From contig NW_026889805.1 in the NCBI RefSeq assembly GCF_033153115.1, positions 8,246,001 through 8,310,000 on the forward strand: DNA of 64,000 nt, written 5' to 3'. The translations under genes were made by a program, and so were the position numbers. The DNA is from Saccostrea echinata. Its lineage: Eukaryota. Below, piece by piece: positions 1,967 to 38,300 of the stretch; position 1 is the stretch's first letter, and every line of letters begins with the position of its first letter. The notes beneath the pieces were generated by a model, which searched no databases, had not been told where the DNA came from, and saw nothing but the letters and a program-made list of their open reading frames with translations.

Positions 1967-2070
1967 GGGGACTGTATCCTGGCTGTGAATGGCGTGGCCC
2001 CAGAGTCCCTGTATGAAGGAGAACAGCTGATTAAGGATACCTTCAGGACCCTAACACTAACTGTATGGAG
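1928..2070 (+). CDS. shroom: Shroom exon: C-terminal half of PDZ domain (VDLEGKSQGCLYEGDCILAVNGVAPESLYEGEQLIKDTFRTLTLTVWR)
   Basis: tttacag acceptor and AG|gtaagc donor (phase 2). The GD-x-I-x-x-VNG ... L-x-L-x-V-x-R PDZ signature resembles the second PDZ exon of vertebrate Shroom2/3/4. Confidence 0.85.
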
Positions 2071-14000: not shown

Positions 14001-17000
14001 TGTATTATTAACAAAAATATTTTTTTCATGGGAGAACCTTGTAAATACAACAAAAATTAAGGCAAAACTGCATACAACAGCTGTAAACCAACTACAATAC
14101 ATGTTTGATTTCTTTGTCCCTACAAAGGTTTAATATTGGGGCATGATGGAACGTTGGCCTATTGAAAGCTATGTACCGAGGTCTTGAAAAATGAGGGGCG
14201 TATAGTGATGGAGTATCTGTCTATACATCCTTCCATCTGTCCATTACACTGGGAGATAGCCACCCCTTATCTGCAACTCCTTTTACATCACTTATTAAAA
14301 TTTAATAAGACTATCACAGAATCTTTATTGCATAGTACCATTACGAACCTCCTATTTTACATTTCAATCAGACACATGTTTGGGGTGTCCAATAGCAAAA
14401 CATTCTTTCTATAATATTGCGGATACCCATCTCTTATCTGCAACTCCTCCTATACCACTGAATAAATTTAATGAGACTTTCACAGAATATTACTTACATG
14501 GGAGTTGAGAATATCATTTTGTTAGCTCATTACTCGACACAGACTACCTCTAGTTTTATTAATTTTTTTCTACAGAATTAAATTAAGTATAACATGCGAT
14601 TACTTTGCTTAATCCATTGAATGAGACAGAATAAAAACATAACTTTCCACTATCGTATAAATTCAGATGTTTCAAGTGATTGTTACCAGGGCTTAAACCA
14701 ACTTCTATCATATTGGGATTAAAAGTTTCACAAATTAAGAAGATACATGTATTTGAAAAATATTTCAGTAAAGTCTTCTTGAAAATGTATACAACTGATG
14801 AACAAGAGAGGAAAATATTACAATATAGGTCAGACAAATTCCTGCACAGTTCACTTGCAGATTGAAGTGCATAAAAAAAACATGGCCACTTGAGCCAAAG
14901 GGCAACTGTAAGTAGGGATCCACATTTTTGCAAGAGCTTATATCTTTGAAAAACATCACATTTTTAAAAAAATGTCTACAGTTCTATGCAGTGTATATTC
15001 ATATTTTTATTCATATGTAGCCCTCAGGCAATAAAAGTTCATCTTAGTTTACAAGTAAAGATCTGACATTAAAATTCACCAAAACCTTCCTCTTTTTTGA
15101 AGAGTAAAAAGTTGTGGTTAAATGAATATGAAGCACTGTCAACCTTTGTCCTGGAGATCAGCAAGGTTCTGTGATTCTTGTCTTACTTATATTTTACATC
15201 AAAAGGAGACAGATGTTAATTACATTGATTTTTCTCATACTATAAGGTGATTAAAGTTAGTATTTTGATCTCTGAGCCTATTGTTAGCTCGCTCAAAATT
15301 TCATGTAACATTTTCACTTTTTTTTTTACTTCTTCAGAACTACAGTGCACTGTACCAGGTCAATTCAACCAAACTTGTCCTAAAGCATTTTCTCAAGGAG
15401 AATAAGGCTATCAAAATGACCAAAATGACAAGATGTAATAACTTAAAGGTAGACTTCAGTTTCTCCATATATCTTAGCTCTTTGGACCAAGTGGAGATAT
15501 GTTGGGGCTTTCTACAAGTTTTACAGATGAGTAGAAAACCTAATGTGGCTCAGTCTTCTGACACTCAGGTGACTGTTAACTCCCATGGGCCTCTTGTTCA
15601 GGACAATACATGAATGGAAATGGGAATGGTTATATGTAGCTCTGCTTCAGGGTCACTTCAGAAAAGACATATTCAAGTTTTCTTGAAGTTACGTATATAT
15701 GCTTGATATAACTTTAAGGGACTGGTAAGTTAACAAGAGGCCCATGGGCCACAATGCTCACCTGAGTCACATTGGTCCTGCTTATTTTGAGAAGAAGATT
15801 CATGAAACGTGATATGACTAATCATGACCCAGTAGATCTTGACAAAAAAGTTTCTTAAGATTTTTTTATTATTGTGTAAACTCAAATTCAAATCTGATTC
15901 AAATCTCTTGATCTGTACTTTCTGAGGCTTTCTATTATTAAAATATGATCAATACCCTTCTGTTGTTGAGAAGAAGAATTTTATAGAGTTTTTATGCCCC
16001 GCCATGAATATGGCCGGGGCATATAGTGTTTGTCATGTCCGTCCTTCCATCTGTCCTTTCTTCACACTTTGCGTTTAGCTCTGTTCAAAGCTCAGTTTTA
16101 ATGAAACCATTCAAGATATCTTTAACAAACTTCATATGCTGATAGATATTGATGAGAGCTTTGCAACTGCATCAACATTTTTTGACCTTGATGTTTCCTT
16201 TGACCTTGACCTCACTTTTCTTAAATTAGTGTTTAGCTCAGTTTTAAAGATACCATTCAAGATAGTGTAATCAAACTTCATATGTTGATACATGCTGATG
16301 AGAGCTATTCAACTGCATCAATATTTTTGACCTTGACCTTTCCTTTGACCTTGACCTCACTTTTCTTAAATAAGTTTTTAGCTCCGTTTTAAAGATACCA
16401 TTCAAGATAGTGTAATCAAACTTCATATGTTGATACATACTGATGTAAGTTATTAAACTGCATCAACATTTTTTGACCTTGACCTTTCTTTTGACCTTGA
16501 CCTCACTTTTCTTAAATTAGTGTTGAGTTCAGTTTTAATGAAACCATTCAAGATATTTTTAACAAACTTCATATGCTGATACATACTGATAAAGATACCA
16601 TTCAAGATAGTGTAATCAAACTTCATATGTTGATACATACTGATGTAAGTTATTCAACTGCATCAATATTTTTGACCTTGCCCTTTCCTTTGACCTTGAC
16701 CTCACTTTTCTTAAATAAGTTTTTAGCTCAGTTTTAAAGATACCATTCAAGGTAGTGTTATCAAACTTCATATGTTGATACATACTGATGAGAGCTATTC
16801 AACTGCATCAACATTTTTTTTAAACCTTGACCTTTCCTTTGACCTTGACCTCACTTTTCTTAAATTAGTGTCAAATTTTATATGCTGATGCATACTGATG
16901 AGAGCTATTCAACTGCATCAATATTTTTTTACTTTGACCTTTCCTTTGACCTTGACCTCACTTTTCTTTGATTAGTGTTTAGCTCAGTTTTAAAACCATT

Positions 17001-20000
17001 CATGATATTTTTATCAAACTTCATTTGCTAATACATACTGTTGTAACCTTTTCAACTGCATAAACAAAATTTGACCTTGACCTTTCGTTTGACCTTGACC
17101 TCACTTTTCTTAAATTTGTGTCAAACTTCATATGCTTATACATTCTAGTGTATGCTATTCAACTGCATCAATATTTTTTCACCTTGACCTTTCCTTTGAC
17201 CTTGACCTCACTTTTCTCAATTTGTGTTAAAATGTTGCATTACTAATTTACCCTCGGCGGGGCATTCATGTCTTATGGACATATTTCTAGTTCTTTATAT
17301 ATTCCTATGTAAAACTTTAATCCTAATTGTGGCCCTACCCTCGCTCCAGGGGTCGTTATTTGAATAAATTTGATTCTGCACTACCTGAAGATGTTTGCAT
17401 ACATGTATATCTATCATTAATCATGCTTGTGCTGTTCTTGAGAAAAAGATTTTTAAAATGTTTTATTATACAATCCCAGGTGGAAATGTGTATCCCTTTT
17501 TGTGGTCCCACCCTACCCCTGGGGTCATGTTTTGAGCAAATTTGATTCTGCATTACCTGATGAAGCATGCATAATTCATGTGACATCAGTAATCATGGCC
17601 AAGCTGTCCTTAGATTTTTCCTTTATTTTCCAATGTAAACTTTGATCCCCAATTGTGGCCCCAAAAATTCCTACCAACAGGGGCCATGGTTTGAACTAAT
17701 CTGAATATGCACTACTTGAGGATGCTTGCATATTAATAGGATTCATTATGGCCCATCTGGACTTGAGAAAAAGATTTTCAAAGATTTTTTTTTGCCAATT
17801 CCATCCTATCTCCCAAGGGCCATGATTTGAACAAATTTGATTCTGCACTACCTGAGGATGTTCTCATATTAATAGGACTTATCATGGTCTTGATATTCTT
17901 TAGAAGATTTTTGAAGATTTTTCCTATTTATTCCCACATAAAACTTTGATCCACTGTTGTAATTACACCCTATCCCCAGGGGCCGTGATTTGAACAAATT
18001 TGAATCTACACTATGACACAAAGCTTTCCTTTATAGTTTCATTTTGTTTAGCCCAGTGGTTCTTGAGAAAATATTTTTCAAAGATGCCACCAAATTTTTG
18101 CAAATTCTCAATTATCTCCCCTTAAAAGAGGGCATGGTTCTTCATTTGAATAAACTAGAATTTGGTTCACTCAAGGATGCTTTGTGGCAAGTTTGATGGA
18201 AATTGGAACAGTGGTTCTAGAGAAGTTGAAGATTTAAAAAGTGTACAGTCAACACACAACAAATGACAGACAGACATATGGACGCCATACACTTTTTGAT
18301 GAGAAAAGTTCACTTGAGCTTTCAACTCAGGTGAGCTTAAAGTATGTACTAGGGGGTACGTTCAGTTGATTGAAGGTAGTTGATCATCCTGTAAAATTGA
18401 GAGAGACTTGAACCTTTAACCTCCTCATTCTGACCTTTGAAGATGTCACCCTAGAAAACTTAAAAGCTGATGCAGTATCAAGATCAATGACTAGCAACAG
18501 CTGTAAGGTCTTTGTGGGACTCTGGTTGACAAGTCCAGCTTCCCTCTGATGTGTCTAGAGGGAGGCACAGTCTGTACATTAAACCATGCAATAACACAGC
18601 ACATCAAGGAAGGCCACCACAGGTAAGGGGGATGTCAGGGCAGGTGGAAATCACAAAGTTTTATGGTTGGTAGATTTTCTTCATGTGTACTGTGTAAATA
18701 CTCATTTTTTCGTGACATCTATTGAGTAAGAAAATTCTCTGACAGACATGTCCTGGTCTGATCTGGGATCTCTCCACCTCTAGATTCTAATTAGAGGATT
18801 CTGTACAATGTTCTAAAGTACACCTGCATGCCTCATGTACCATGGGATATGTTTAATTAAATTGAACTATCTGCTAAATTTATCTTGCCTGTTTTTCTAA
18901 CTCAGGGTTGGCAGGTAATGACAGCTATACTGATCAATCCATTTTGGTGCACACCATACATTTCTTTGTTCCACTACATTGAATAGAAACGTTACATCTG
19001 TAAATCTCTCTAAATTTGAATATAAGAAGGCTGAAAGCTGAAGGCTGTTGAAAAATATCCAGTGATATAAATTAAAAGTAAGTCACTTTTCCTTGCTATC
19101 ACTTACATTAGGTAAAAAGAATTTCCCTAAGGCAGCAAATCTATTTTTGTTTGTGATGCAAATATATCATGTATTCATACTACATATAAATGCAATGTAA
19201 AGTTTGTTCAAATTGACAATGCAATGTGATATTGCAACACTTGAAAATATTAAGAATTTTCTAATTTGATGGCATGTTTAGAAATTTTTGTTTTATCACA
19301 TCAAGCTTCTATAATCTTTTTTTTCTCTATTAAATCATTTGATTTTGCATGCTGTGCAAGTTTGATGTTGATTAACAAACAATGTCATCAAGAATTTTTA
19401 CTGAGGTTAAATTTTTACATGAGATTAAGACTTTTGGAGACTGTTTCGGTAAAGGCAATGGCATAGAGTAACCAAATATAAAGGTATTGATTTAAGGAAA
19501 AAAATGTTAAATAGAGGCAATTTAAAAATATAAGGTAGTCTTCTTGTAGAATTTGGAACCAGTGTTCTATGGGGTTTGGTTTTGAGCTAATTTGACCATG
19601 TGGTTTTCTGGCTTTCATTCTGTAACATTTCTGGGTTAAGGTATGCTCAAATCAATTAATTTGCTGAGGTGAAAAAGCTTTAGAACACAGTTTATTTCTT
19701 GTAAATAATTTTTTGTTGATTGAAGAAACCAGTATTATCTATCTTTAAAATATATAAACCATTTGTAGAAGTCTGAATCAATATGTGTTTTTCATTGAAT
19801 ACATGTTGAAAGCACAGTGCTCAAACCTGCAAAGTTTGCATTATTGAAGATAGTTCTTAAAATTGATCCATGTTAGAAATTTGAGTATGTTATCCCTATT
19901 GCATAACCTCTTACCTAAAGCATGGATTTTTAATTATGCAATAAATGAAATAAAGAAATTGTACTTGGAGATGAAAGGCACAAAGATTGAATTCTTAATG

Positions 20001-23000
20001 ATATTGGTATAGAATCAATATTTAAATGGGTACAGACATTCTTATGCTTGGTAATTTTGCATGGTATGATTTTTCTTTGCATATTAATGTGGCAACTGTT
20101 GATGATAACCTTGAAGTGCATTACTCAGGTTGAATCAGAATAAAATCATTCCTCTTACTATATATCATTCATTTTGTAACTCTGACTTTGACCATGTTAA
20201 GCTAGAAAGGGCTGACGAACCGGACAAGATTCCTTTGCCTTGTCTTCTTGTCATGACAGCGATTAAATGCGTCAACCATAGCATGCGCAGTGTTGTTAGA
20301 AATGCACATTGTATGGAAGACTTTGTGTGACCAATGTTTGCAGGAAATGTCAGATTCTTGATACAAGAATTTTTTTTAAAATCTACAGACTTGTCAAAAC
20401 CTGGAGTCAAATTCCAATTAGATTAATTGTGATGAAATGTGAAAAGAAACCTGAGGTAAATTTATTTCCTAATGGTTATTCATCCATGAGAGAGATGTAA
20501 TTAACCTTTTGCAAGGAACATAAGAAGAGATTTTCAATCATTGATAATAGTAACATGTATGATGTGGTTATACTTCATACTGAAGACATGCTGACCAGTG
20601 GTCAACTTGCTGACTGACTAATAGAAATCTTCTGTCACCTTCTTGCAGACTTGCTTCTTGTTAACTAACTTGCATTCATCCATCACTGGTCTGAGAGTTT
20701 GTATGTTCATTTCTTTCACATAGAGTTTTGGTCTGTTACTACAATAAATGGTAACAGATCTGAACATTAAATTTTAGACATTGTATTTTCATATAGTAAA
20801 GATATTGATGAGCCTAAATATTTTCCAATAACAGAAAAAATAGATTACTGTATGTATTGTTATTAAGTTATGGGAAAAATCACTAGAAATGGGTGTTTAA
20901 AGAGGATTTATCAAATTAAACTTAAGTTTGTTGGAAGAAAATATGAGTTGTGCATCCTATCAAGGTTTAACTTAATCCGATTAACTTCTTTGCCATAAAC
21001 CAGTCTTGTTTTACATACTGGTTTATAATGATATACTTTGTCTGTCCCAGTGCAGGTATAATTCTGTTGTTTTAGCATGTCAGATTTGGTAAGTAAGGAA
21101 TGGAACAAAATGTCTCTGTAACCAGGTCTTTTAAGTGTTTGTTTGTCATTTAAAGGATACAGTTTCTCAAAGAATTAGATAATGGATTTCAGAGTAAACA
21201 TTTTATAGGTTTGGTCCATTTGTTAAAGACAAGGTGTTTTTTTACCTTTATTTTTGGGTTCAGGTGTTTAATCGTTAGATCAGAGGTAGATGGTGATACC
21301 GATCAGAGATTGCAATAGTCCTGTGTTTGGTTTGATGCTCCTACAATTGCCATTGTCATCAGTAGACATTTACTAACAGATGGGCTACCTTTAATCATTT
21401 TTTGCTGCACATTAGATATCTGTCTGTTCACTCCAATGCAGATTTTGATGTATGATTTTCTTTCTTGTTTGGCCTTGTATGTTGCAAGGATCAAGCTAGT
21501 CTAGACAATTCTTGTAAAGGATTAATTTAAAGCAGTGACCAAATGGTGTGCTTTTTGTTACAGTAAAAATGGAAAATGACCTTTTGATGGCAAAGGTATG
21601 GGAAAAAATTCAAAATTCGGTCCTTTTTTTCTTCTGAAGTTGAGGTACCAGTATATCCTTGGGGGTAATTGTAACAAAAGCTTACAAGAAGAGACTTGGC
21701 CAATTAGGTTACTTTCAAGTGATCAAATGATCAGAGGTTTATAATCGGCACTTGACAACAACAAATTTCATCTGATAATGAGCAAATATTTGTTAAAGAA
21801 CACTTCTGAAAGTAAAAATTGTTTTCTTATGTACTATTTCAAAGCTTCTTAAATTGGATATATGATACATGTTGAAAGGTTAAGTGCATTAAAATAAAGC
21901 TGGATATTGAATTCATGTTCAATATTTAGTTAGCCTGTAAAATTATTTAAGGGCATTCACCCTGGCATACATTTTTTTAAGTGATTTGACCCTCTCATTT
22001 TATGTTATTCTAGGAATCTGTAAAGATACAGTTTATAATTGTAGGAAGATTTGTATTGTTTGTAAGTATATATATCTTCTAGCCTCTTTCTTTCATTTTT
22101 TTTTTTAAAATAAAAATCAAATTTTGTCTGTACATAAAAGTGTTTTCGTGTTCAACATCTTGGATCATTAGTTCATAGACATGAAATGCACCTGAGTAAT
22201 TAAAGTGAGGTATGTTAAATTTCAAATTCTTTCTATTGATTTAAACATTTTATGTGTATTTTGGAATTGTGTATCTGCAACCTTGAAAAAACATAACAAT
22301 AGGAAAATAAATGAAAAAGAATTTGTGAAGTAAAAAATGAAAATTGAGGAAGAAAACCTTCTCTATAATAAGTGCCCTTTTCTATACAACACTTGAAATT
22401 TTATGAAATATTTGCTTTAATATCATCGTGCAGGTGCAGTAAATAATTCCCTCTCCACAATCTGTAATTTTGCCAGATCCCTTTGTAACTTAATGATTAC
22501 ATGGATATGATGAATGTAAAATTCGGTCCACCCCTCCTCAAATGTATGTACTACAGCTATCATATAGAGTTAATAGCTGTATTTACTGTGTTTTATTTCA
22601 CTGAAATCAAAAATCACTCTTACTGTGGTATATAAAATTCCTGATAATTTTTAAAGCTGAAGAATATACCAGTAATTGAAAGTGTTAATAGGCAGTTGTA
22701 AATCTTGAATGTTGGTGATAAAATTTAATGCTTGTGTGTCAAACGAAGAAATTCTTTTAAAGATTTGAAATACTGCTTGATTTTATCAAATATTGGTCAG
22801 ATCCATTTTGTCATCTACTTTGAAACATATCATTGCAAAGGGAAAGAGTTCTTCTTAGGGACACTATAATTCTTTCTTGTCTTAAATACTGTAAAAGTTG
22901 CATATTGTTGTATGGAAATTTGAGTGATTCTGAGAGATTTATTAGGGATTAGTTCTTTAGCAGGAGTTGACCTAAGCTGGCCCCTCTGTATTTCTTAGCC

Positions 23001-26000
23001 CTTGTCTGATGCAGCTGTACTTTAACCACAAAGAGAAAAATACCCATAGATTTTTAAGATTCATTAATCAAAATACCAGTGTTATTATTTATTTCATTAT
23101 GGATATGCTCTTTCAGATTTTCCTTAATTGCAAGAATTTCAGTAAGTGATTCAATGTCATTCATATTTCCATTATTTTGTACCTTAGAGGGTCAACAAAC
23201 TTCATCACTTAATTAAGTACATTGTAAGTGTATCTTATATTTGCTCAAATTAATGCCAAGGGATAAAGAAATTAAAAAAAGATAGCAGCACTTGATTACT
23301 AAGTTTTCCTTTGCATTTACTTTGAGGGGGAAATATATTGGGAAAAATGGGGGGGGGGGGGTCAGCATTCATTATGCTCCTTCTTTGAAAAAGTCTGCAT
23401 CTTTGCCTGTACAGTATCTTTATTTTCCAGTAAGATAATTAAAATAGAGATGAAATATTTATTTAAGCTTAACTGAGTATCATCAAGTAGGGAATGTCAA
23501 ATACACCTCAGATAAGATCTGTGCATAAGTGCCTTTTGGATACCACTGAGTAGGGCCTTTTGACTACCACTTGGTGGTGCCTATTTGGTACCATTGAATG
23601 AGGCCTGTCTGATCTCACTCAGTAGGGTCTGCCTGGTACTACTCAGTAGGGCTGTTGAAGAGGGTAAATCCTATGGGACCAACCATTTTTGCATCTGAGT
23701 GTATTGGATTAGTATTGGGGACCGAGGACATGTTGTGTCATACTTTGACACCTGAGCTCCAAACAAAGCTATCTAGATTTGGAGCAATGAAGGACAACAG
23801 CTATATACAGTAGCGTGACATGTAAATGGGTGGCAGGACAATATAAAATTACTCTTGTTAAATAGCTACATCCAAACAACAACAACAAAATACAGAGGAA
23901 AGCGACTTTTATGGTACATTAAATGTAGGAATTAAGGGATATAGTGGGGTCTTCTATTTAGTTTTTAACATTGGTGTGGGATATACTGTTACAGTTTCTT
24001 GTAATTGATACATTTCTGACAAAACTAGGACAAAACTAGGACAACTGACATTGTAATAGCGGGAAGTTTGGGTAGTGAAAGATGAAAGAGTTAGGGTAAA
24101 CCTTGTACAATAATACAATCCAACATGCTAAGCTTGTGAAGGGATGAATAGTTCTTTAAAACAAAATCTGATAAAATCGCATATATTAGGATTTTGCCAA
24201 AGTTTAAGACAGCATTTGTCACTAGGAATATATATATATATTACCACTGATTTGATTTTTAGCAAATGGATTTAAGACTGTTACTTCAATGTTTTGCTGA
24301 CATGACAATGGCAAGAGACATTTGCAGAGAAACTTAAAATTTTAAAGAACTTTGGAGATATTGTAAAACTTGAGATTTATTCCTTGTAAAATGAAGAGGC
24401 AATCCAGTCTGAACTATGTGGATTATATGAAACTTGTCAGGTGAATTGTTATATTTGTTTCGAAAGTTTTTATAATTGCTTTTTCTTCAGAGAAATACAC
24501 AATATAAGTGTAAAAATGTTTCTTTTTGCCTTATTGGGAAAGTTGTCTACCAGACTTTGTTTCTGCCTTATTGAGAAAGTTGTCTATCACACTTAGTGTC
24601 TGCCTTATTGAGAAAGTTGTCTACCACACTTAGTTTCTGCCTTATTGAGAAAGTTGTCTACCACACTTAGTTTCTGCCTTATTGAGAAAGTTGTCTACCA
24701 CACTTAGTTTCTGCCTGATTGAGAAAGTTGTCAACAAGACTTAGTTTCTGCCTTATTGAGAAAGTTGTCTACCAGACTTAGTGGACTGATGTTTCTTTAA
24801 TTTTTAAACAATATTTTATTCACAGATCTAAAAGTGAATAGGATTGTGCAGCAGGCTCAGTCTATTTTAGCCCTCTTCCTAATGATGTTTCCTAACTGAT
24901 GTTTCTTTCTGTCATTTTTGTAAAAGTTGTCTATCAGATTTAGAAGACCGATTTTTTTTCTGTCTTATTGAGAAAGTTGTCTACCAGACTTAGTGGACTG
25001 ATGCAAACTTCAACTGACCAGGGATGGCAAACCAAGAAGAGATTTGGAATACATGGAAAATACTTAAACTTATAAGGAGCTAAAATAAAACTCTTTCTTT
25101 TTCTTTGATTTATCTTTAATAAGAATTCATTCAATTTAGTTACTGGTTAATTTCTCTCTCTGTAATTATGGGACTGTCCATTAAAACATGTCTTTAAAGA
25201 AAATGATGCTTGTGAAAGCTGGAGAGATGGTACTTTATTTCTAACTTGTGTTGCCTTATGACTGGCAGTGCAGACACCAAGTTTAATGTGCAGAGGCATG
25301 CGGTGCAATTGCCATTGTCTAGGAAGCAAACATGGTATTAAATGCAAAGAATGGGAAACTTTGAACAAATAAAAAGCTGCGGTCTATCATACGTTGGCAT
25401 TGCTGATCCCCAGTGTGGGTCCGTCATTAGAAGTTTGTGATCCTTGTGGGCTTAGCTCAATAAGAACCTTTTCACCTCCAATCATGCTGTGATATATAGG
25501 CAGAATGATTCTCAATTTTATAGAAAAATCTTTTCATCATGATCTAACAAAAGCTTATCAATACACTCTGTAACAAGATCTGCATGCATTGTGCATGAGT
25601 TTGTTCATAGACTATCTATAACGTGTATTCCTGTAATCACTAACTTGTTAAGAACCTTGATGTTCCTTAGTATTGCTCCTCTTGTATTAAATTGGTGTCA
25701 ATATTGTTTGTATAAAGTTTCATTTTTATCTTTTCCCCCTTTTCAGTAACCTCAAGTGTTTTTGAAAATATTTCGATAACCCTTCAACAACACCTTCATT
25801 AATAATCTGTGGTTTTATTTCCTCAAACAGGGGGACCTCCAAACTTGAGTCAAGTGTGAAGATTCTTAGGTCTTCTTCATTCCTTCATCGATCACGAGAA
25901 GTCCAGGAACGGGAACGGAACCAGTCTGGGAACCAGGATGACAGCACAAGGACAACAGAAGATCCAAGATCTGCAGAGAAAATGAAGCCAAGGCAACGCA

Positions 26001-29000
26001 GGGTCGAGAGCTTCCAGTATGTAAAACTTTTCAATTTTAAAGAAATCAGTAAAATTTCTGTTTAAACCCATACATGTTGCCCAAATTTAAGTTTGACTAA
26101 AATAGTTACTTTAGCTGATTCTAGTTTAATTAAATCTCAAATCGGTTACTAAGTTGTGTAGACTTAATGATAGAATATTTTACATTTAGTTAACGGTATG
26201 TTAATTTTTGTAATTTAGAAATAATTATAAGTAGTTTAAGAGTGTTGTTTGAATTTAAACTGTACTTTAATGTGACGTGCAAAAAATGATTAATGCCAAT
26301 TTGAGTTATTTACATCATATCATACATCACAGACACGTGTTTTGCTCCTCTGGTTGAAACTTTGTGTATTAGTTTAAATTGAAAATCTTTAAAAGGTTTG
26401 TTTGCTCCATTTTTGCAGTTTGTTCAATGTATTAGTAATTGCTGTAAAATAGATGGCATTAGTGCCCATTTTGGCGCCTGTAGCCTCATAAATTGTGGAC
26501 GTACCCGTGCCGCATACACTTGTGGATCTAGTCCCCTTAGTTCTTCCACAAAGCATTCTTTTTGAGACATTGATAGCCTTTTAACCTTGAATTCTAATTT
26601 ACCCATAATAGCTTGTTATTATATTAGTCAAATATTTTTATGGATGAAAAACTGACAAAAAGATTTAATCAAGTTCCTGTCATGTGCAGTCAAATGCGAA
26701 AAGCCGGCTTTAAGGAATTTCTAAATAATGAAACAGATTTTGAACATGGCCAAGATTTCTGTCCTTGTTGTCAATTATAATGAATATAATTTCTTAACAA
26801 ATATGTCTCAAATCTCTAGTAAAACTATTCTGCATGGACAGAGAATCTATAAGTTTAAATTTTCCTACTTAAAATATTACTGCTCAATAAAATATTACTG
26901 CCCAATAAAATATTACTGCCCGAACATGCTTTTCTTGTTTAACAGAAATAAACAATTTCTACTCAATACTTCTATGTCACCAGTATTAAAGCAAAGTTGG
27001 TAGTTCTAATTATTACAAGGACTGTGCATACAATAATATTGGCCCCAACATTTGTGGTTAAAGCTTCTGTGAATCAGAGATATCTGTTTGGCCTTGTGGG
27101 ATTGCAATGGTAACCTGAGTGTGTTTGATCTTGGGACAGATGACATGATCTGGTAGATATATCCTCGGATGCATGGCTGACCCCATTATATCAGACTATA
27201 ACTACTAAAGCCCACTGCTGTCTGCGGTCTCTGTCAGTGTTCTACTCAGTTCTAAGTTCTGGCTCAGTCACATATACCGAATTTAAACAGTTAAAGCTTA
27301 ATTCACTTAGTTAATCACTGTCAGGTGATCCTAACATTAAAGAAAAATCAAAACAAAAAAAAGAAAACAAAAACATTCACCTGGTTAATTGTCTTGTAAT
27401 AAAATAATAAGTTTATGCGGTTGCTATTTAAGAAGATGTACTGTAACAAGCAAGATAAAGGAACAGCATTGGTAAATAATGAAGCGTGAGACCCTCTAAT
27501 TGGACTTTACGAAATTCTTAATATAAACCATAAAGAAGGCAGCACAAGTCACAATGCCAAATACATTTTATGGCATTGCACCTCTTTGCATCACTGTCTT
27601 GGATAATATTCAAGGAATTTTTATGATGGGTAGATGTTCTTACTGTAATAACATGTGAAAGAGCTGTGAGGTGTCAGTCTAGCAGAATCACAACTCATTA
27701 ATCCATCACCTAGACTGGAATGGAGACAACTTAATATTCTGACATTGGAAGATGTGCATGGGTATCACCAGCTCTCGATTCCTCACTGTGGCAGGTGACA
27801 GGGTGCACCCAGGGCTTGGAATTCTGCTCATGAGGGTTAAGTTTTACCTACAAACAACATGAGTTTGGTGTCGTCTAACCCAGAGACATTGAATGCCACT
27901 GTCTGGAACACTGGCCATTTTCTCGTTCATTACCTGCCTGGCATAAATACTCTTATGTCACTGAGAGCCATGTTGTTTTATTCTGTGACTCTCTACCAAT
28001 AAAAACAAGGAGGACTTCTGATCTGGAAGAAAGTAAACATTCAAATGATGAGGAAGCTAGTAAAATTCAAATGATAAAGACTTATCTGGAAGATACTAAA
28101 CTTTCAAATGACCAAGATTTCTGATCTGGAAGATATTAAAACATTCATATGATCAAGACTTCTGATTTGGAAGATACTAAACTTTCAAATGTAGTGTTGT
28201 GCTCACTTTGATTAAGAATGGGACTTTCAGCCTCAAAACAAAGTAACACTGAGTGTGTGATAGTGGAGTCATGTTCAGTTTTGGAGGAAGACAAAGATTG
28301 TGGTGTAGAGGATCCCTCAGACTCTTCTCATAATGAGTAAGTTTACACCACTGTATTCTACTCCGATTGAGGCTGATTTAAATCAGAAAGGGTGTACATG
28401 GCCGATTTCAATACATCAATAGTTTATGATGGCATATGGCATTGAACAAGTGTCAAAAAAGCTGCTTTGATTTCAAGTTTGATGACTTTTAAGGACCTTT
28501 TTGTTAGAAATAAGAATTCGGTTACTCTGTTACATGTATATCAAAATATATCCAGCCCACTCTGTCCTTGACTCTTGGCTACCAGGCTGTTTGATGGTTC
28601 AACCCCAATGAAGACCATTGAAAGGCAATGTTATAAATGTTGTATGAAATTATTCCATCAGTATACTTTTTAACTTGAACAAATTGAGCAATTCAATGTC
28701 TCATCAACTTTTTTCCACATTTCATATTGATAATTATCAATATATGATAGAGTTTATAAAATATGAGGAAACCTTTATTAAAAATAATCATTTGACCAAA
28801 AGTTAAGGCCATAATTTAAAGGAATTTTTAATAATGATACATATTTATCTTTCAAATAAATTGGCAAAGCAATCAAATTAAATTTCTGTATCTTTGTTAT
28901 TTCATGAAGTATTTATGAAATTCTGATTTATTATGTGGTAAAATGTATTTTTAATTTCTAGAGGCAGTAGGGGGCACATGATTTAAAGGTAAATTTTGGA

Positions 29001-29409
29001 ATTGGGGGGCCTATAATGAGGCAGCCCACTATTATACACATTCACTACTTTAAGTTTCTGTAAAAGTCAGTGTGTGTTCACTTTCAGAAAATAATGAATA
29101 GCATAATTTAGTGTCGATGTTTCATGATAATTGTTGGGCAGACATGCAGCTGTTTTGAAAGAGTCTTACTAAGGGAGTTAACTCTTGACCCTACTTGCCA
29201 AACCTCATCTTTTTATTCTTTTCAGTTACTGTCAGCTCACTTGTATGGGAAAAAACAAAACATGTCATGGAAGAGAGAACTGTCCCTTACTCATTTATTT
29301 GTACATAATTTTAAATATCTGTAATAATTAATATTTAGAATCCAGGGGAATGGCTCATGTATTGCCTTCAGCCACCCAAGAACTATAATAATGAATAAGT
29401 GTATAAAGT

Positions 29410-29499
<90 letters not shown>

Positions 29500-32273
29500 C
29501 AACTTAATGATATTATGCTGAACTTCCCCAAAGTTCAACAAGAAATAATATGTCATGGGATGGCTTTACTGTGTACATGTGACCTTTAACTTTCTTCCAA
29601 TGAATAAAAGGTGGAGGATAAATTACAAGGTAGAAAATCATTGATCACACCTTAGATCATATTACCAGTATAAGCAGTACTGCCAAAAATAGGGAAAAAA
29701 ATACTAATATAAAGATCGAGATCTCAATTTCCCCTCTGTTAGTCATATATACAGCCATGTCTATAGTCTGTGTTTGGACTAAAGGCCAGAAAAAGATTTA
29801 TTTATAGTACAACAAGAAATATTTCAATCAATGAGAGGTTAAGATTTTAATAATTACTTGCAGATCAGTATTGATGGATTGCGGATCAGATTTGCTTCCC
29901 CTTATCAGCTTATAAATGTTGCAGTCAAGATGGAAAAGAGCTTACTATAGGCTTAAATTAGATAGCAAGGCAAATTATGTGTAGATATGTAGAAATTGAC
30001 AAAATATTTGATCTACACTTCTAATTGGGTCCTGTGTACTTATTGTGTTGATTTAGGATCAGAGATCTTTCAAACACCTGGTTATCTTGAGGGTAGATTT
30101 ATCGTGGGACAAAATTCACTCCCCAAAAAACTATAGCTTTAAAAATATAGTCTCCTATATTCCACCCTTGTACCCACAAGTGAAAATAGCAATGAAATCA
30201 CACCTGTCTGTGTTGAAGCGAATCAACTGTGTGCCTTGTCATCAAATTCAGTCAAGACACGCCTCCTTCTGGTGGCATTTTATTTCCTAATAACTTAGCG
30301 TATACTTACAGGTAGCTAATGTACATCAGTGATGAGCCATTTGTCATAGATTAAAGGTACTTTTCACTATATATTTAGACAGCCGGAAATAGCATAACTC
30401 TATTCTCAAGTTTATAGAGACAAAGAAATCTGAAATTTTCTTGGGACTAGTCATTGAGATCTGGGAGACATATTTGTGTAGGATAATATTGGATCGAAGT
30501 GTGTGTGTACAGTGTGAGGGAGACATTTACCTTTATACAGGTAAGAAACCATACAATAACAAGAATATGGTCATTACTGAGGATTTGATGACAGTCAGTG
30601 AAAAGCAGTTTGACTTTTGTATTTTTGTTCAGATAAATCTATGTAGATACACATTTCTTCACCTAATCAAAGCTAGACATGCAAACGGATGATTTCTTCC
30701 TACCTGTAATAGTGTGACCCCCTTAAGGGAAGGCAGAAATCAGCTGATCATGGATGGTAGAATTGATACTGTTTATATCCATGTGTACCAGTCACCTTGA
30801 ATGACTTCAGTGTAACATCTACTGATGAGAAAAATTGAAGACAAATAATCAAATTATTGATATATTTGGTGACACTCATGTTCAAATGAATCCATTTGTA
30901 AGGATTTGTGACATTCAAACCACTTTTAATTATTGTTATAAAATCAGCATGTCGTAAACAAATTTATAACAGGTACATGAAAACATAGTGTGTTCATGCA
31001 TTTGGTGATAATATTTTTGACAATATATATAAGTATTCTGTCCTTCAGTGGTCAAAACATACAAAGAAATCCCTCTCTCTTTCTCTCAATCTCTCTCAAA
31101 GATCAACTTGATTTTTGAGACAATATACTTATATTTTGCATGTCATGATAACTTTGCTGATTAATCTTTTGTTCTTTATGTTTGAAGTTTAAACTGGGTC
31201 AGGAGCACCAATAAGCTTTGTGCTTTGTCATTGCTGGATGGGTTTTTGGCTTGTTTAATGAAGGCTGACCCTGATAATGGCCTGTAACTACTAGTGGGAT
31301 CCTTCAAATAAGAATATCAATGTTCAAACTTAATGACTTTGTTTGTAGGGAGGTTAAATAAAAAGGCTTTCTGGCTAGGGACAGGTTTCCGGACATTTTG
31401 GTTTTGTCTCTCAGTTGTGGCCCTCATTGCCATGTTGATTTAGGATCTTGTCCGGAATTGGACCAGTACACTAGTTCTTAATCTGCCGAAGTTTGGAATT
31501 TGTGATTTTGTTTTCAGAGTAAGGAACTTGTTTAGAAGTGTTTTGGTAGTTTGGCATACTTACTTTCTATGCGTTTGTTGATTGCTAAGAGGCAAACATT
31601 CTTGTCATTTCTTATGTATTTTGTCAGGGGACATGATGTTCCTCTGGGTGACAATGGCATGCAGGAAATTCTCTGTTTTGTAGTTTCCGCTGTGAAAAAT
31701 CATTTGTCTACTTAAATAATCACGCATGTCTGCAATCAATTACTTTACATCATTGAAAAGTTATTTATATTGATTTGAAATTTCTTTTAACCTGTCAAAC
31801 TGACAATAAATCAACTTGTAGAGGAATTGAAAAATTTATTGGAGCAGAATTCACATTTCTTTTTAAGGTAACATTTTACCTGAGTCTAAGACGTTAGTCA
31901 TTACTACGCCATGCTTTATTGGTGTAATTAATTAAGACAAGATGTTTTTTTGGTCGTATTTTATAATACAGTTAGGGTCAAAGAGAACAGGATAAAAAGA
32001 TTGGCCTCTATCAAAATATCACAGCTTATTTTCCAAATCAATAAATCTCACACACTCCCATTATAATTACAAATTAATTAAATACAAGGTTCATTTAGTG
32101 CAGGTTTTGTGGCATACTTAACAGTTTAATGTTTAAAGATTTTGTTGGTGAAAGTAGCTCAGCATGTTATTTCTTTTTTCGAAAAATTAGTGATTATAAG
32201 TTAGAGATATTGATTCATTTTCTAGTCTGGCTGTTTGATGTGAAAGTACCAATATAAATGTTTGCCTCAAGAG

Positions 32274-32315
<42 letters not shown>

Positions 32316-35300
32316 GAAAAATAGAAGTTAAAATTCAAAGTACAATATGATCTTAAAAAGTTTTAAGTTTTTAATGTTTTTCTTGAATCTCCATAAAAAA
32401 TATTTTCGACAGATTTATTTTTGTTATCTTTTTTTTAACTTTTTTTTTTTGGTGAAACATGAAAAACAATTTAATGTTTAAATTAAATTCACACAGGAAA
32501 TGTTGGTGTACTATTGCTTTATCTTGGAGAGGAGAGATCAGAATCGTTTTTTTACATGTGTACTGAGGGGGATATTGTTCTTTTCCAGTCGTCCATGGTA
32601 CACCTATTGTCAAATAAACCTTCAGTGCACAGAACAACACGACCTTGGTCATTGAAATGTAAACATTATTCGGATAAATACAATAATATCAAATTACATT
32701 TATTTAACTTTTATATGACTTTATGTTACAAACTTAATATTTTTTTCAGATTTAATTTATAATTAGAATAAATTTCAACATTTTTCATTTGCATTAAAAA
32801 AAAGGTTAATTGGAGTAAATATGAAATGTTAAAAATATATGTTAAAAAAAAATCACCTTAATTAGTAGCATGATAAGCTACCGCAACAGGTTTTTTTTTT
32901 TATCTGCTAAATTTGTCAAAATATTTTAACAACCTCCCCAAATCCTATATCTTAGATCCACACCTGACATACATCTTATATTTTTTTAAATAAGTGTCTG
33001 GTATGATTAAGTCACACTATTATCAAGAGACATAAATTACACTATTTACATCTCTGTATTATCAAAGTTTCTCAGATAAAAGTTAGACTTTATGGGAATA
33101 TTTTTGTAACTTTCCATAGATGGGTTTTATAATAATAATTTATTATACATGTATGTTTATTGATGTACAAAACCCATTTTGAAAACAAAAACTAAATTTC
33201 TCTAGAGATTTAGTATTTATCTTATTACTGCTATAAATTTAAATTAGAGGTGACAGCTACTCGTTATTGATGGTATTTCTGATAAAAACACCCAGGGGTC
33301 AACTGCACGAATTTATGTTCGGATATCAATAGTCTGACCGTCTAATCTCTATAATTCTTCTTACGTTGATACTTCCTCCTGCGTTCAGGTGAGATTCCCA
33401 TCTTACCTGTCTGAAGAAAATCAAAATAGTCGAATGATCGTAAGTACGCAAGTGTTTATTCCTTTTGTTTGGATTATTTCAGAGTATTTGAAAGGTGAGG
33501 ATTTTTTGTCTATCAAATATTAACGTGTACAGGATACATAAAGTAAGCCACCTGTGCGAAATCAACACTGATCAATTCGGAACACACCTACCCGCTCTGT
33601 TTACAAGCTTCCTAATCGTGAAGATGAAAATGTACAAATTAAACTGTTTAGTAAGAGAAAATACAAAATATTTATTTCTAATTTTCCAGTTTTATGTGGA
33701 TTATTAAGTCAAAAATGGATAAGGACAGGGAGCAGTATATTAATTGGATAGGCATACCATTTTAAACAGCAGTTCAATTTAGATTTCAGATAACATGAAA
33801 AAAAGAGAAGAATACTGAAATTATAAAAAAAAAAAAAGAAGAATTTCATTTTTATGTATGAAGTAGTATTTAGAAAATGACCAGAAGATGCAATTTTTAA
33901 AATTTGTTCAAAGAGAACAATTAAGTTATGTTGATGAGGATGGTGGGAATATGTAATCTATGATTTTTTTCTGTTTATTGTCAATAAAGTCAGATATACA
34001 TTTTTCATTGAATTCTTAAAGCTTTAGTTGAATTTCCCTCTCCCTCTTATTAAATATAGATCTTAATTTTCTAGCCTATTTTACATGTTGAAACAATGTG
34101 ACCACCTCAAGAGGTGTGAACACTGAGGTCAGTTGATACAAGTATTTACTTTTGAGATTTAAGTCAAAAATCTTAAACATTGGTCTCCTACTGGCAATTT
34201 ATTCTTAAGAAGAGAAACTGTCAACACATTTTAATCAAACTTGGTGGATTCATTGTTTACACAACAAAGATCCTATCAGGATATGTTTGTGCTAGTCCTT
34301 AGTTCTAGCCATTTACCACTTAACTGTGTTGGATAAATAAGTGTAACTTAGAATGAATTTAGTGTATAGAGGGAGAAGTTTCTTGCAGTGAGACGATAAT
34401 AACAAGCAGAAGGGGCCTTTATATTACCCATTTAATATGTTTATTATATCACTGACATTTAAATCTAAGTTTTAAGTCACAGTGGTTATATGTAATTATT
34501 TCACTGACCATAGATAGACCTGGTGTTTGCGTAGCATAGGCATACATGAAGGTTCAAGGTAAAAGCCTGTATATTACTTTTCTTTTTCTTTGTTATTAAA
34601 AATCAAGTAATTCATAAACAGTCAAGTTTTAGACAGACATATAAGTGTCATTTGGAATGACAGTGGTTGTTAGTACAGTTGTTTCAAAAATATAAAATAA
34701 ACTTTCAAATGACTTTTGAACCCAGTGGTTTGGATGGTCTCTATTTTATGCAAATATTAATGCTAAAGAAAATTTTTATGTGAATTTGTTTTGTTTTGTT
34801 TTATTATTATTATTTTTTTGGTGGGAAAAGGGGGGAGGGGGGGGGGTTGTTGTTGTACAGGGTAGACTGGTCATGACTCTTTTAAGTAAATTCACTTTAG
34901 CTGACTTGCTTGTCCCCCCTTCATCTTGACATAAAAGAATATACTATTTTAGTGTTGCAAATTGGGCTATTATTTAAATTATTCATTAAATTTGCCATTT
35001 GCAAACAGAGTTTAATTACCAGCATTCTTGACAGTGAATAAGAAATGTGATGTAATTGCACTGATATCGAATAAAGAACTAGACAACATTATGTGCACAT
35101 TATCAAATATTTAAACTCTTTTGTGGTCTAAAAAAGGTCCACATTCCTGGTGTCAAATTAAAAGATGTGATTGATCTCCAGGGCTGGTTTGTACACAACT
35201 TTTAAATGGATAGGAATATAAAACATATGATGAAATATTAATTTTTTACAAACAGTTTGCTGGCTGTAGTGTTTTTCCAGTCGGAGAACTAGTTACATGT

Positions 35301-38300
35301 TCGGATTAATTCGATTCTTTGATGGTAATTGTACAGTTTATGTTATACAATGCCTCCTAATTAAGGTCTTCTTTGATAGGTTTGCATGTTGTGCTTTAAC
35401 GTTTATATGATATGAGGACTTTCTCCATTATAGGTATTACAATGGTTGGCTGGACAATAAAAAAATTCACATACCTTTTCCAAATCCCCCCTGGCAGAAC
35501 ATAAGTGTGTAGATGTGATATGCAGTGTTTATTTGTCAATTTTTGGATTTAAATTTTATGAAAATTGCTTTTTCTGTTAGGTGTTTGAAAGATTTTTGAA
35601 TCTCAGTTGGTGTGGTCTCTGCAGAGAGAGTTGGGCCAACATTTTTTGGCTAGAGTACAGAGTGAAATTGATTAAATATAGCTTAGAATCTGTTTGTATG
35701 TGATTACTTACCTACATGCATTATTGATATTTTATATTTTATTCTGTGCACTATTGATTGGGCTGTTCTGACTCTTTGTGATGCAAGTTAACGAAGAAGG
35801 GAGACCAGGTTCTCCACTCAGGTGAGGCTGATGATCACTCACAGGTGTATATCGTGTGCTTCACGTCATTTCTCATCATGAAGTAAAACATCCATTGTAG
35901 TGAAGAAGGGAACATATTAAATAGGTATGTCTCCCTGAGACTGCATTTCTAAGCTTTTTCATTCAGACCCTGTAGGGATTGTATTTGTTATTGTGTGTTC
36001 CCCTACTGAGCAATTCAGAATATGTGTCAAGAGAGAGACTAATGAAGTCGAGGAATAGTTACAAAAAGGAGTCATTTCACCCCTGATTTGTCTCTTGTCA
36101 CATTTGTCTGGACATTGCTGAGAAGTAATTTGACCTAGTTCATTGGTTGATATAGATTGACACTATGTATGCTACTAAACATTTTATATCAGGCAGTAAA
36201 GAAATAACATCTCTAAAAGATGAGTACAGTATAATGTAATGAAAATGCATTTATGATCTTCAATTTGATCATGACCTGAGTATAAAATAGATTTAATCCA
36301 TACACAATCTTTTTCTTTTGAAGTTATACATGGTATTGGTGCCAGAACCAAATTCAGTACAGGTTGTTTGTGTTTGTATGTGGTTAGATTGTCATTAAAC
36401 CATAAACGGACTGTTCCTCTCAATCCAATGCACTAATGTCTTCCAAGTCATTGTCCAGGGGTAATTAATGATTAGTAATGCATTGATGATGACCTTATTC
36501 ATGTTATTGTTTTACTGCTATTTAATTAAGGTCTGGTAGTGCACAGTCCAGTGTGCCATAGCCTCTTGACAGATGAACATGCATAGTTCTCCCCAAGATT
36601 AGAAGGGGGGCAAATGACCAGTCCATCATTTGTGATATAGACCAAAACCACTGACCAGTGAGAATTTTATGATTGACGTATAGCTGGTAATTGGCAGTTT
36701 GTATAGGTGCTCTGAATAGGAACAATAAAAGTTTCTCCATAAAAACACTACTTCTTCACAGACCGAGTCAGGCCTATACAGGTATCTGTTTAGGTAGAAA
36801 GGATCACTGCTTTGTGGGGAAAGGTCATTTCCCAACCAATTTAATGGTCTGAATGCATTTAGGGCCCACTGCCCTGTATTTGGGTGTCAGCTTTATTTGT
36901 TTTCATGATTACAACTTAATATTGTCACATGCATTCACTATGCAGACACTATGGTGGACACTGTTTACCTTTTGAAACCACCGAGACACAGATTTTTTAT
37001 ATTTTTCTTGAGACAGCTTTTTTACTGTTGCCAGAATGAAGGATTAGATATTGTCTGGTATAGCTGGTGTCTTCTCAGTGGAGAGATTAAAACATAGGAA
37101 ATTTTCTAATCCTTTTTTTCCTTACACACACAGGTAAGAGGATTTGTGCCAGGCACATAATGTAAGGGCAGCTCTTGGCAGAGTGCAGCTGAAAAGTCAG
37201 CTGGTATTCTTTGGGACTGTTTTCACAGTTGCTAAAAGTCAAGTTTTTCTCCCACTACTTGAACTAGCATTAACGGGGCTGGTGAAGGTTTACTTCCGAG
37301 ATTATTTCTTGAATAGGACATTTCTTACTGGACATGTACGCATTGACCAATGTAGGATTGTCCATCCTGGGAAAGTACCAATTAAAACAATTGTATAGAG
37401 TTTGTCTGGTATCATATGGTGAATAAGTACACTGCTTAAGTGTTGTGTTGACCAGTGACTGTTGTATGTATTTTGAACAGTGAATCAAAGGTTAGATGCT
37501 TCTGTGCAATGTGAGTATAATTTTCTTTAGGACAGTTTTTACCTTTTCTTCTGCTGTTTTAAAATGATTAAGGGAACTAGTGGAAAGGTAGCTTGGTGAA
37601 TTTATTTGGAAGAGTTGTTTCTTCTGAAAGCTCTTGATATTCCATGCTACAATAATATCCTGGACCCACCAAAGCTATGTTAATCCCCCTGATACTGCTC
37701 ATTTGAGTTTGATGTATGAGGTATGTAGTTTTAATGATACAGGTGGGTGACAGGGATTTTTATTGACTTTATCTGTATTTGTATAGTGAATGCACTGTGT
37801 GTGTTATCAGAATGACATAACATTAGTGACAGGCAGACAAACAGGCTGTGTGATACCAGGTCCCCATATCTGCTTCATACAACTGAATACTGTCAGGGTT
37901 TAGGGTAACACAAATGGTGTTATGAAATCTTAATTCAATATTTACCTTGTATATCCCAAAGATTGTGTAACGGTCCAAATATTTGTGCCACTGTTCAAGT
38001 TACAAGATATTTGAATGTTAAACCTTTTAAGAAAATTATTACAAGTGAGAAAAATAATTTTTGAGACCTGCGTGTAGGTCACTTGACATTTGAATTAAGT
38101 ACTAAAAACTGGAACATGATTTCTTGTGTATTAGGCAACAAGGAACTGTTAATTTGCATTTCAAAATGGCATGACAATGTGTTTAAGGTGGCATTAAACT
38201 AAGTACATATATTACTTTCTATTTCATTACATGAATCGTGTTTCAGTTTCCTTCTATTTGTGTTAGATTGATGCGTTTTAGCGTGTAATTGGTGGATTGG

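What the first reader, a model, noticed from the sequence alone, without database searches (positions are those of the whole stretch)
28218..28336. Candidate N-myristoylated Shroom isoform (MGLSASK...)
Seen: the first in-frame ATG gives M-G-L-S-A-S-K, with three cysteines downstream, and ends at a perfect gtaagt donor in the phase needed for exon 42247. Established: Gly2/Ser6/Lys7 is the preferred N-myristoyltransferase substrate. Inference: an isoform that replaces the PDZ N-terminus with a lipid anchor would tether the actin/ROCK scaffold directly to membranes. I am not aware of a described myristoylated Shroom.
Basis: partly seen in the sequence, partly recalled or inferred. Interest (0 to 1): 0.75.

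Follow-up and report, generated by a model that had tools for sequence, protein, structure and literature searches.

The report
Lipid-anchor-type alternative start of oyster Shroom
This short stretch is an alternative first coding exon of an oyster Shroom gene, a cell-shape regulator; it swaps the usual front domain for a start that looks like a fatty-acid attachment signal, but nobody has shown that the fat is attached.

Summary
Window 28218-28336 is an ATG-initiated open frame of 119 nt (MGLSASKQSNTEC...). It has an in-frame TGA 9 nt upstream and a gtaagt donor in phase 2, which fits the acceptor at 42247.

It is not a chance ORF. A RefSeq model from a sister species, XP_062609161.1 (Shroom3-like isoform X2, Saccostrea cucullata, P0096), begins MGLSASKQSNTES... 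and runs ...SHN-D-GRSKTRHSSS. That is the same exon and the same junction. Its first 43 residues map to 28218-28337 and nowhere else in the window (E 4.7e-11).

An RNA-type contig of a third, related oyster (X5) covers the exon. No contig of the two runs that are 99% or more alike to the window (X1, X2) covers it.

A Mytilus isoform (P0121) starts MGNNASQ on the same acceptor exon.

MGLSASK fits the strict N-myristoyltransferase motif quoted in PMC9018777.

The leader is acidic (net charge -7) and only Cys19 is conserved, so stable membrane tethering is not supported. No searched paper describes a myristoylated Shroom.

Verdict: a real PDZ-less isoform, already predicted in a sister species. 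Its lipidation is plausible but untested.

The parts
28218..28336 (+). Coding part of the alternative first exon: MGLSASKQSNTECVIVESCSVLEEDKDCGVEDPSDSSHN plus 2 bases (phase 2)
   Evidence: Sequence read. ORF listed. tblastn of P0096 residues 1-43 gives 72% identity, E 4.7e-11. X5 contig covers 28211-28312.
28337..28342 (+). Splice donor GTAAGT
28025..28191 (+). 41-bp tandem repeat just upstream of the ATG. It is probably part of the 5' leader. It carries 6 upstream ATGs, all closed before 28212.
   Evidence: TRF. uATG list. The X5 contig runs through it with 96 extra letters.
42247..42652 (+). Shared second coding exon (GRSKTRHSSS...KGWNTVQ), the acceptor for all three alternative upstream exons
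   Evidence: tblastn at 91-99% identity. Loose ends of X1 and X5 contigs after 26016/26013 read into it.
25832..26016 (+). Constitutive exon of the PDZ isoform (RGTSKLESS...MKPRQRRVESF). Its phase-2 donor is gtatgt. The MG exon lies 2.2 kb downstream, in the 16-kb intron.
   Evidence: 100% identity to P0097. Contigs of X1, X2 and X5.
6484..6602 (+). Another alternative first coding exon (MERGAKPARILL...), also 119 nt and phase 2
   Evidence: 90% identity to the N-terminus of P0088.
1919..2071 (+). Second half of the PDZ domain of the long isoform
   Evidence: tblastn of P0097 residues 57-107 at 94% identity. PDZ at residues 34-105 of P0097.
60597..61154 (+). ASD2 (Shroom domain 2) exons, the Rho-kinase-binding end of the protein
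   Evidence: PF08687 at 77.9 and 48.4 bits against a cut-off of 26.4..
27383..28022 (-). Exon of a spliced minus-strand transcript. Its intron (28023-30703) contains the MG exon.
   Evidence: Joint 28022>30704 with CT..AC ends in contigs of X1 and X2. No ORF of 50 aa or more.
30704..30821 (-). Upstream exon of the same minus-strand transcript

Best explanation
An internal promoter lies in the 16-kb intron between exon 25832-26016 and exon 42247 of the single Shroom gene of this oyster. It gives a transcript whose first exon contributes 39 codons and then splices to 42247. The product is a Shroom of about 2,170 residues that has no PDZ domain and keeps ASD2.

After removal of Met1, Gly2 of GLSASK is a canonical substrate of N-myristoyltransferase, so the isoform is probably myristoylated as it is translated.

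The rest of the leader is acidic. I therefore expect the lipid to give only weak or switchable membrane or partner binding. It would bias where ASD2 recruits Rho-kinase and myosin II rather than act as a stand-alone anchor, unless Cys19 is also palmitoylated.

Shown: the exon is real and orthologous, and the junction exists in a sister species' model. Inferred: use in this species, lipidation, and any effect on localisation.
For: - P0096 (XP_062609161.1, S. cucullata isoform X2) starts MGLSASKQSNTES and continues ...SHNDGRSKTRHSSS.
- Its residues 1-43 hit 28218-28337 only (E 4.7e-11), and the rest of it maps to the downstream exons at 91-95% identity.
- P0096 has ASD2 and no PDZ. P0097, which is 99-100% identical to the window, has both.
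- The frame stays open across an in-frame 3-residue length difference. The first 12 residues are identical, against 72% identity over the whole leader.
- One 296-nt contig of X5 covers 28155-28312. It is the only X5 piece in the intronic part of the 5.5 kb laid, and its loose end reads on in frame.
- The motif M-G-[^DEFRWY]-x-[^DEKR]-[ACGST]-[KR] is quoted in PMC9018777 (passage). MGLSASK fits it fully.
- P0121 (Mytilus californianus isoform X7) starts MGNNASQ and joins the same exon.
- Of 131 stored models of 1800 aa or more that start with M (89 distinct starts), 2 start with MG, and both carry the motif.
- Drosophila Shroom isoforms differ in subcellular distribution (PMC7875558, passage).
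Against: - No contig of X1 or X2 (99% or more alike) or of X3 covers the exon, although X1 and X2 cover the neighbouring Shroom exon and an antisense transcript.
- The only model in the cluster from the species that matches the window at 99-100% is the PDZ form.
- The last ~15 letters of the X5 contig were not shown, so no RNA junction 28336>42247 was seen. That contig has depth 3.7 against 71.6 for the main isoform, so it could be pre-mRNA.
- Six upstream ATGs lie in the probable leader.
- O. edulis has three annotated isoforms and none starts with MG.
- The window and Mytilus leaders are not demonstrably homologous: 579 of 2000 shuffles reach the alignment score.
- At a proteome base rate of roughly 1-2% MG-motif starts (recalled), 2 of 89 is not an excess.
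- Net charge is -7, there is no basic patch, and Cys13 and Cys28 are not conserved.
Confidence: 0.5

Rival explanations
1. The exon is real and spliced, but the MG start is a coincidence. The isoform matters because it lacks the PDZ domain, and the N-terminal glycine is either acetylated or unmodified, or serves as a glycine N-degron (recalled).
For: - PDZ-less isoforms with unrelated short leaders on the same acceptor exon are common in molluscs. Examples are MLYVLL.., MVSNLQ.., MLKFPVKSG, MVDIIVGS, MPS, MHLNIFD and MSGYYQ...
- By my own reading of those printouts, there are about 12 distinct leaders, and 2 of them start with MG.
- The two MG leaders are not significantly alike.
- The leader evolves faster (72% identity) than the rest of the protein (91-95%).
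Against: - The first 12 residues are identical between the window and P0096, while the rest of the leader diverges.
- The X5 contig shows no listed difference in 28218-28248 but 6 listed differences further on.
- The motif is met at all five constrained positions.
Confidence: 0.25
2. In the window's own species the exon is silent or is transcriptional noise. It would be a relic or cryptic start in an intron that also hosts an antisense non-coding RNA and a minisatellite, and little or no protein would be made from it.
For: - None of X1, X2 and X3 gave a contig on the exon.
- A single PDZ isoform is annotated for the matching species in the cluster read.
- Upstream ATGs lie in the repeat.
- An antisense spliced transcript spans the exon in its intron.
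Against: - The ATG, the frame, the donor and the phase are all intact in the window.
- Only a few small contig sets were examined, and the tool states that a hole proves nothing.
- The sister-species model and the X5 contig show that the exon is used in close relatives.
Confidence: 0.17
3. The leader is myristoylated, but the lipid does not act as a membrane anchor. It would work as an intramolecular or partner-binding switch, in the way the myristoyl group does in c-Abl 1b (recalled).
For: - The tail is acidic (net charge -7 in the window, -6 in P0096, -4 in P0121).
- There is no basic cluster and no cysteine near Gly2.
Against: There is no evidence for a lipid-binding pocket in Shroom. Nothing was tested here.
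Confidence: 0.08

Closest known systems
RefSeq XP_062609161.1, protein Shroom3-like isoform X2 (Saccostrea cucullata), stored as P0096
   Same: Same leader exon: the first 12 residues are identical and the leader is 72% identical overall. Same junction residue Asp followed by GRSKTRHSSS. No PDZ, ASD2 present.
   Different: Its leader is 3 residues longer. Cys13 and Cys28 are replaced by Ser. It is an automatic prediction with no stated lipidation.
RefSeq XP_052077577.1, isoform X7 (Mytilus californianus), stored as P0121
   Same: It starts MGNNAS, has a short acidic leader with one Cys, joins the equivalent exon (GSRTRRYDK), and has ASD2 only.
   Different: It has Gln, not Lys/Arg, at position 7. 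Its leader is 27 residues. Overall similarity to the window's leader is not above shuffles (579 of 2000), so common descent is not shown.
Short or PDZ-less Shroom isoforms, e.g. Drosophila ShroomA/ShroomB
   Same: One gene gives isoforms with different N-terminal parts and different subcellular distribution, and ASD2 is kept (PMC7875558, passages, which cite Bolinger et al. 2010).
   Different: No lipid signal is described there. ShroomB also lacks the actin-binding part, whereas the oyster MG isoform keeps everything downstream of exon 42247.
N-myristoylated proteins with MGxxxS[KR] starts (Src-family kinases, G-alpha subunits)
   Same: The motif M-G-[^DEFRWY]-x-[^DEKR]-[ACGST]-[KR] is met. 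The c-Yes leader MGCIKSK is used as a membrane tag (PMC5945229, passage).
   Different: Those proteins carry a second signal next to Gly2: a Cys at position 3-6 or a basic cluster. This leader has neither.

Membership tests
Shroom family | C-terminal ASD2 domain (PF08687) | tested here: met
   The window exons score 77.9 and 48.4 bits against a cut-off of 26.4. P0096 scores 184.9 bits and P0097 184.5 bits. These were the only ASD2 matches among the 8 candidates scored in the genome.
Shroom family | N-terminal PDZ domain (Shroom2/3/4 type) | tested here: met
   For the long isoform, PF00595 scores 24.2 bits against a cut-off of 23.2 in P0097, and half of the domain maps to 1919-2071. The MG isoform lacks it by construction (P0096).
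Shroom family | ASD1 actin-binding domain (PF08688) | tested here: not met
   No Pfam hit at E up to 1 in five large exon translations of the window. No hit at E up to 0.001 in P0096, P0097 or P0121. A divergent SD1, as described for Drosophila, cannot be excluded.
Shroom family | Rho-kinase-binding residues of SD2 | tested here: inconclusive
Binding was not testable here.
N-myristoyltransferase substrates | Met1-Gly2 with the motif M-G-[^DEFRWY]-x-[^DEKR]-[ACGST]-[KR] | tested here: met
   MGLSASK fits at every position. The motif is as quoted in PMC9018777. It also fits 3 other + strand ATGs of the window by chance.
N-myristoyltransferase substrates | The ATG is the start of a translated mRNA | tested here: inconclusive
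   For: the sister-species RefSeq model and the X5 contig. Against: no contig over the exon in X1, X2 or X3, and six upstream ATGs.
N-myristoyltransferase substrates | Myristate attached to Gly2 | not testable with these tools
   This needs metabolic labelling or mass spectrometry.
Stably membrane-anchored myristoylated proteins (two-signal rule, recalled) | A second signal near Gly2: a basic cluster or a palmitoylatable Cys | tested here: not met
   Net charge is -7, and the only basic residues are Lys7 and Lys26. Cys residues are at 13, 19 and 28, and only Cys19 is kept in P0096. Cys13 is changed in X5 (28255 G>C).
Alternative first exon of a multi-promoter gene | Own donor in a phase compatible with the shared acceptor, and the junction seen in a transcript | tested here: inconclusive
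   The donor and phase are met. The junction is seen only as protein sequence of the sister-species model, not in RNA of this species.

The most novel reading that the evidence does not exclude
Pteriomorph bivalves (oysters and mussels) keep a dedicated lipid-modified Shroom isoform. In it a myristoylated, possibly also palmitoylated, acidic leader replaces the PDZ domain as the module that places the Shroom-Rho-kinase-myosin machine at a membrane. This would be a mode of Shroom localisation not described in any animal.
Probability: 0.25. Interest if true: 0.6.

Novelty: new variant of a known kind. Interest (0 to 1): 0.42.

Why it matters
Shroom proteins shape epithelial cells by bringing Rho-kinase and myosin II to a defined cortical site. 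Where they sit is set by their N-terminal and central parts.

A natural isoform that trades the PDZ domain for a lipidation signal would be a simple, testable alternative way of positioning this machine. It would add Shroom to the cytoskeletal regulators controlled by N-myristoylation.

For genome annotation, it shows that the matching species' single annotated isoform misses at least two alternative first coding exons: 28218-28336 and 6484-6602.

The scope is limited. The signal was found only in two bivalve lineages, and nothing biochemical is known.

Tried and rejected
- Pfam on five exon translations of the window found nothing. The family was fixed only by the ASD2 search of the genome.
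- The bacterial promoter/terminator scan is irrelevant to an animal gene and I ignored it.
- The search for homologous proteins on residues 1-175 of P0096 returned only P0043, its own cluster representative.
- The same tool with a 75-residue N-terminal piece of P0096 gave nothing: 1 candidate, none scored. So no short transcript-derived peptides with this leader are in that collection.
- The search for related loci on metagenome contigs: 315 pattern matches, none confirmed.
- No Crassostrea/Magallana Shroom appeared in any search, so that genus could not be checked.
- The search of earlier findings by words gave nothing.
- I considered that the exon might be a repeat or a transposon piece. I rejected this because it is single-copy in the genome.
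- I considered that the 0.21 share of words in X1 meant the exon is expressed. I rejected this because that share comes from the antisense exon 27383-28022.
- I did not build or search the joined spliced protein of the window. Exons were searched apart, and natural orthologous proteins stood in for the joined model.
- No supplementary files were opened. The myristoylome lists of Castrec et al. 2018 (seen only as a citation) could hold a Shroom entry that I could not see.
- Papers: for PMC5945229, PMC7875558 and PMC9018777 I saw passages found by term. For all others I saw only search listings. Bolinger 2010, Castrec 2018 and Resh 1999 were seen only as cited references. The two-signal rule, the c-Abl switch, the glycine degron and the proteome base rate are recalled.
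Full report
**What is at the coordinates**

- Window 28218-28336 (+ strand) starts with ATG in a strong context: A at -3 and G at +4.
- An in-frame TGA lies 9 nt upstream.
- The frame stays open for 39 codons plus 2 bases. It reads MGLSASKQSNTECVIVESCSVLEEDKDCGVEDPSDSSHN.
- GTAAGT follows at 28337.
- At 42247 a pyrimidine tract and cag precede an exon. Its first base completes GA+T = Asp, and it continues GRSKTRHSSSNAL... up to a gtgagc donor after 42652.

**Which gene this is**

- The genome's only ASD2 (PF08687) matches among the 8 candidates scored lie at window 60597-60764 and 60909-61139, at 48.4 and 77.9 bits against a cut-off of 26.4.
- A phmmer search with the 1118-residue exon 42895-46248 against 1.84 billion representatives gave 41 hits. 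All those I read were mollusc Shroom-like proteins.
- A word-based search with P0003 named them as Shroom2/3-like proteins of bivalves and gastropods.
- tblastn of P0097 (XP_061164131.1, Shroom3-like, Saccostrea echinata) on the window gives 99-100% identity over most exons:
  - 25829-26014
  - 42242-42652
  - 42886-46197
  - 54103-54906
  - 57935-59116
- The remaining matched exons are 1919-2071 and 46720-46773 (94%), 59792-60007 (75%), 60033-60140 (97%) and 60597-61154 (77%, an alignment that runs across an intron).
- P0097 has a PDZ domain (residues 34-105) and ASD2.
- The candidate exon lies 2.2 kb into the 16-kb intron between 26016 and 42247.

**Is the exon more than chance?**

Taken alone, an ATG-to-GTRAGT frame of 100 nt or more in the right phase is not very rare.
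- There are 2 on the + strand of 1..42246 and none in that phase on the whole reverse strand. Other phases have 1 and 2.
- The strict myristoylation motif fits 4 of 1450 + strand ATGs and 0 of 1382 - strand ATGs.

What decides the matter is orthology.
- Listing the members of the 90% clusters of ten hits gave P0096 = XP_062609161.1, 'protein Shroom3-like isoform X2 [Saccostrea cucullata]', 2168 aa.
- P0096 starts MGLSASKQSNTESVIVESCSVLEGDKDSGLGEPSEDIYPSHNDGRSKTRHSSSNAL.
- Its residues 1-43 hit 28218-28337 (72% identity, E 4.7e-11) and nothing else in the window. Residues 44 onward follow the downstream exons at 91-95% identity.
- So both the exon and its junction onto 42247 exist in an annotated model of a sister species.
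- That model lacks the PDZ domain and the RGTSKLESS...RRVESF exon, and it keeps ASD2.
- The two leaders differ by an in-frame 3-residue indel, and their first 12 residues are identical.
- The stretch is single-copy in the genome.

- The contigs are spliced, so they derive from RNA.
  - X1 has a 3207-nt contig that covers 25829-26016 and then reads on as the start of exon 42247.
  - X5 does the same.
  - This confirms the constitutive junction 26016>42247.
- X1, X2 and X3 have no contig over 28218-28336. X1 and X2 are 99% or more alike to the window. X3 laid nothing on the stretch at all.
- X5, from a relative 90-95% alike, has one 296-nt contig of depth 3.7.
  - It covers 28155-28191 and 28211-28312, with 96 extra letters in the tandem repeat.
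  - It then has 48 loose letters. The 30 shown continue the frame as ...PLEDIFRSHN, close to ...PSEDIYPSHN in P0096.
  - No difference is listed in 28218-28248 (codons 1-10). Six are listed further on: T11M (two bases), C13S, V14A and two synonymous changes.
  - It is the only X5 piece in the intronic part of the stretch, which argues against random pre-mRNA.
  - However, the ~15 letters beyond the donor were not shown, so I did not see a spliced junction.
- The 0.21 word share that brought X1 in comes from something else: a minus-strand spliced transcript.
  - Its exons are 27383-28022 and 30704-30821.
  - Its intron ends read CT..AC on the + strand.
  - It is seen in X1 and X2.
  - That intron contains the MG exon.

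**Conservation of Gly2 beyond Saccostrea**

- I read three batches of cluster members, which gave 263 stored proteins.
- Of these, 131 are 1800 aa or longer and start with M. They have 89 distinct first-ten-residue starts, and 2 of them start with MG: P0096 and P0121.
- P0121 = XP_052077577.1, Mytilus californianus isoform X7. It reads MGNNASQTKCKEVNINSNEESQSEDEI and then GSRTRRYDK, the equivalent acceptor exon. It has ASD2 only.
- Other mollusc isoforms join the same exon with unrelated short leaders, or start at the conserved M[KR]PRQRR[GIV]ESF exon.
- O. edulis has three annotated isoforms and none starts with MG.
- The window and Mytilus leaders are not significantly alike overall: 579 of 2000 shuffles reach the score.
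- The recurrence may therefore be common descent with fast divergence, convergence, or coincidence.
- With a recalled base rate of 1-2% MG-motif proteins, 2 of 89 is not an excess. Two of roughly 12 leaders on this particular acceptor (my own reading of the printouts) is mildly suggestive.

**Is it a myristoylation signal?**

- The current substrate motif is quoted in PMC9018777 (passage) from Castrec et al. 2018. [quoted passage not shown]
- MGLSASK meets every position. MGNNASQ meets all but position 7, which the same passage says may be tolerated.
- So, if translated from this ATG, the protein is a good candidate substrate.

- The leader has net charge -7 (-6 in P0096, -4 in P0121) and no basic cluster.
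- Its cysteines are far from Gly2, and only Cys19 is shared with P0096.
- By the two-signal rule (recalled), myristate alone gives weak, reversible binding.
- The probable 5' leader runs through a 41-bp tandem repeat (28025-28191).
  - The repeat holds six upstream ATGs.
  - All six are in weak context, and their frames all close before 28212.
  - This may lower translation from the MG codon.

**Literature**

- 'Shroom' together with 'myristoyl' occurs in 29 papers. None of the 15 listed has both in title or abstract.
- In the one I opened, the term refers to an engineered tag on another protein.
- Five exact phrases for a myristoylated Shroom gave 0 papers.
- Drosophila Shroom isoforms with different subcellular distributions are described in PMC7875558 (passages).

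**Verdict**

- The stretch is a genuine alternative first coding exon giving a PDZ-less Shroom. It is already predicted in RefSeq for a sister species and is absent from the one model of the matching species in the cluster I read.
- The lipidation idea is consistent with the best available motif and with strict conservation of the first 10-12 residues among three close relatives. It is untested.
- Use of the exon in this species was not seen, and a stand-alone membrane anchor is unlikely.
- I did not build or search the joined spliced model of the window.

Noticed in passing
window 27383-28022 and 30704-30821, minus strand: A spliced minus-strand transcript is seen in contigs of X1 (depth 21.9) and X2. 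Its intron (28023-30703, CT..AC on the + strand) contains the MG exon. No ORF of 50 aa or more lies in the 640-nt exon, so it is probably a non-coding antisense RNA.
   Followed up: partly
window 28025-28191: A 41-bp tandem repeat of about 3.6 copies ends 27 bp before the ATG. The related organism of X5 has 96 more letters there. The repeat carries six short upstream reading frames.
   Followed up: partly
window 6484-6602: A second alternative first coding exon (MERGAKPARILLSPPPLKVNYDQLPV...), also 119 nt and phase 2. It is 90% identical to the N-terminus of O. edulis isoform X2 (P0088). It would join exon 25832.
   Followed up: partly
window 46720-46773: An 18-residue micro-exon matched by P0097 but not by P0096, so it is probably alternatively spliced.
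   Followed up: no
The similar form LLLKLSGLLAR is in Pinctada and Mytilus proteins. It therefore looks like a mollusc-wide trait rather than a lesion.
   Followed up: partly
window 42247-42276: The X1 contig's continuation into exon 42247 differs from the window by one letter, which is probably an allele.
   Followed up: no
window 25983-26016: The peptide M[KR]PRQRR[GIV]ESF at the end of exon 25832-26016 is conserved from bivalves to gastropods. It is used as the annotated start of several mollusc isoforms.
   Followed up: no
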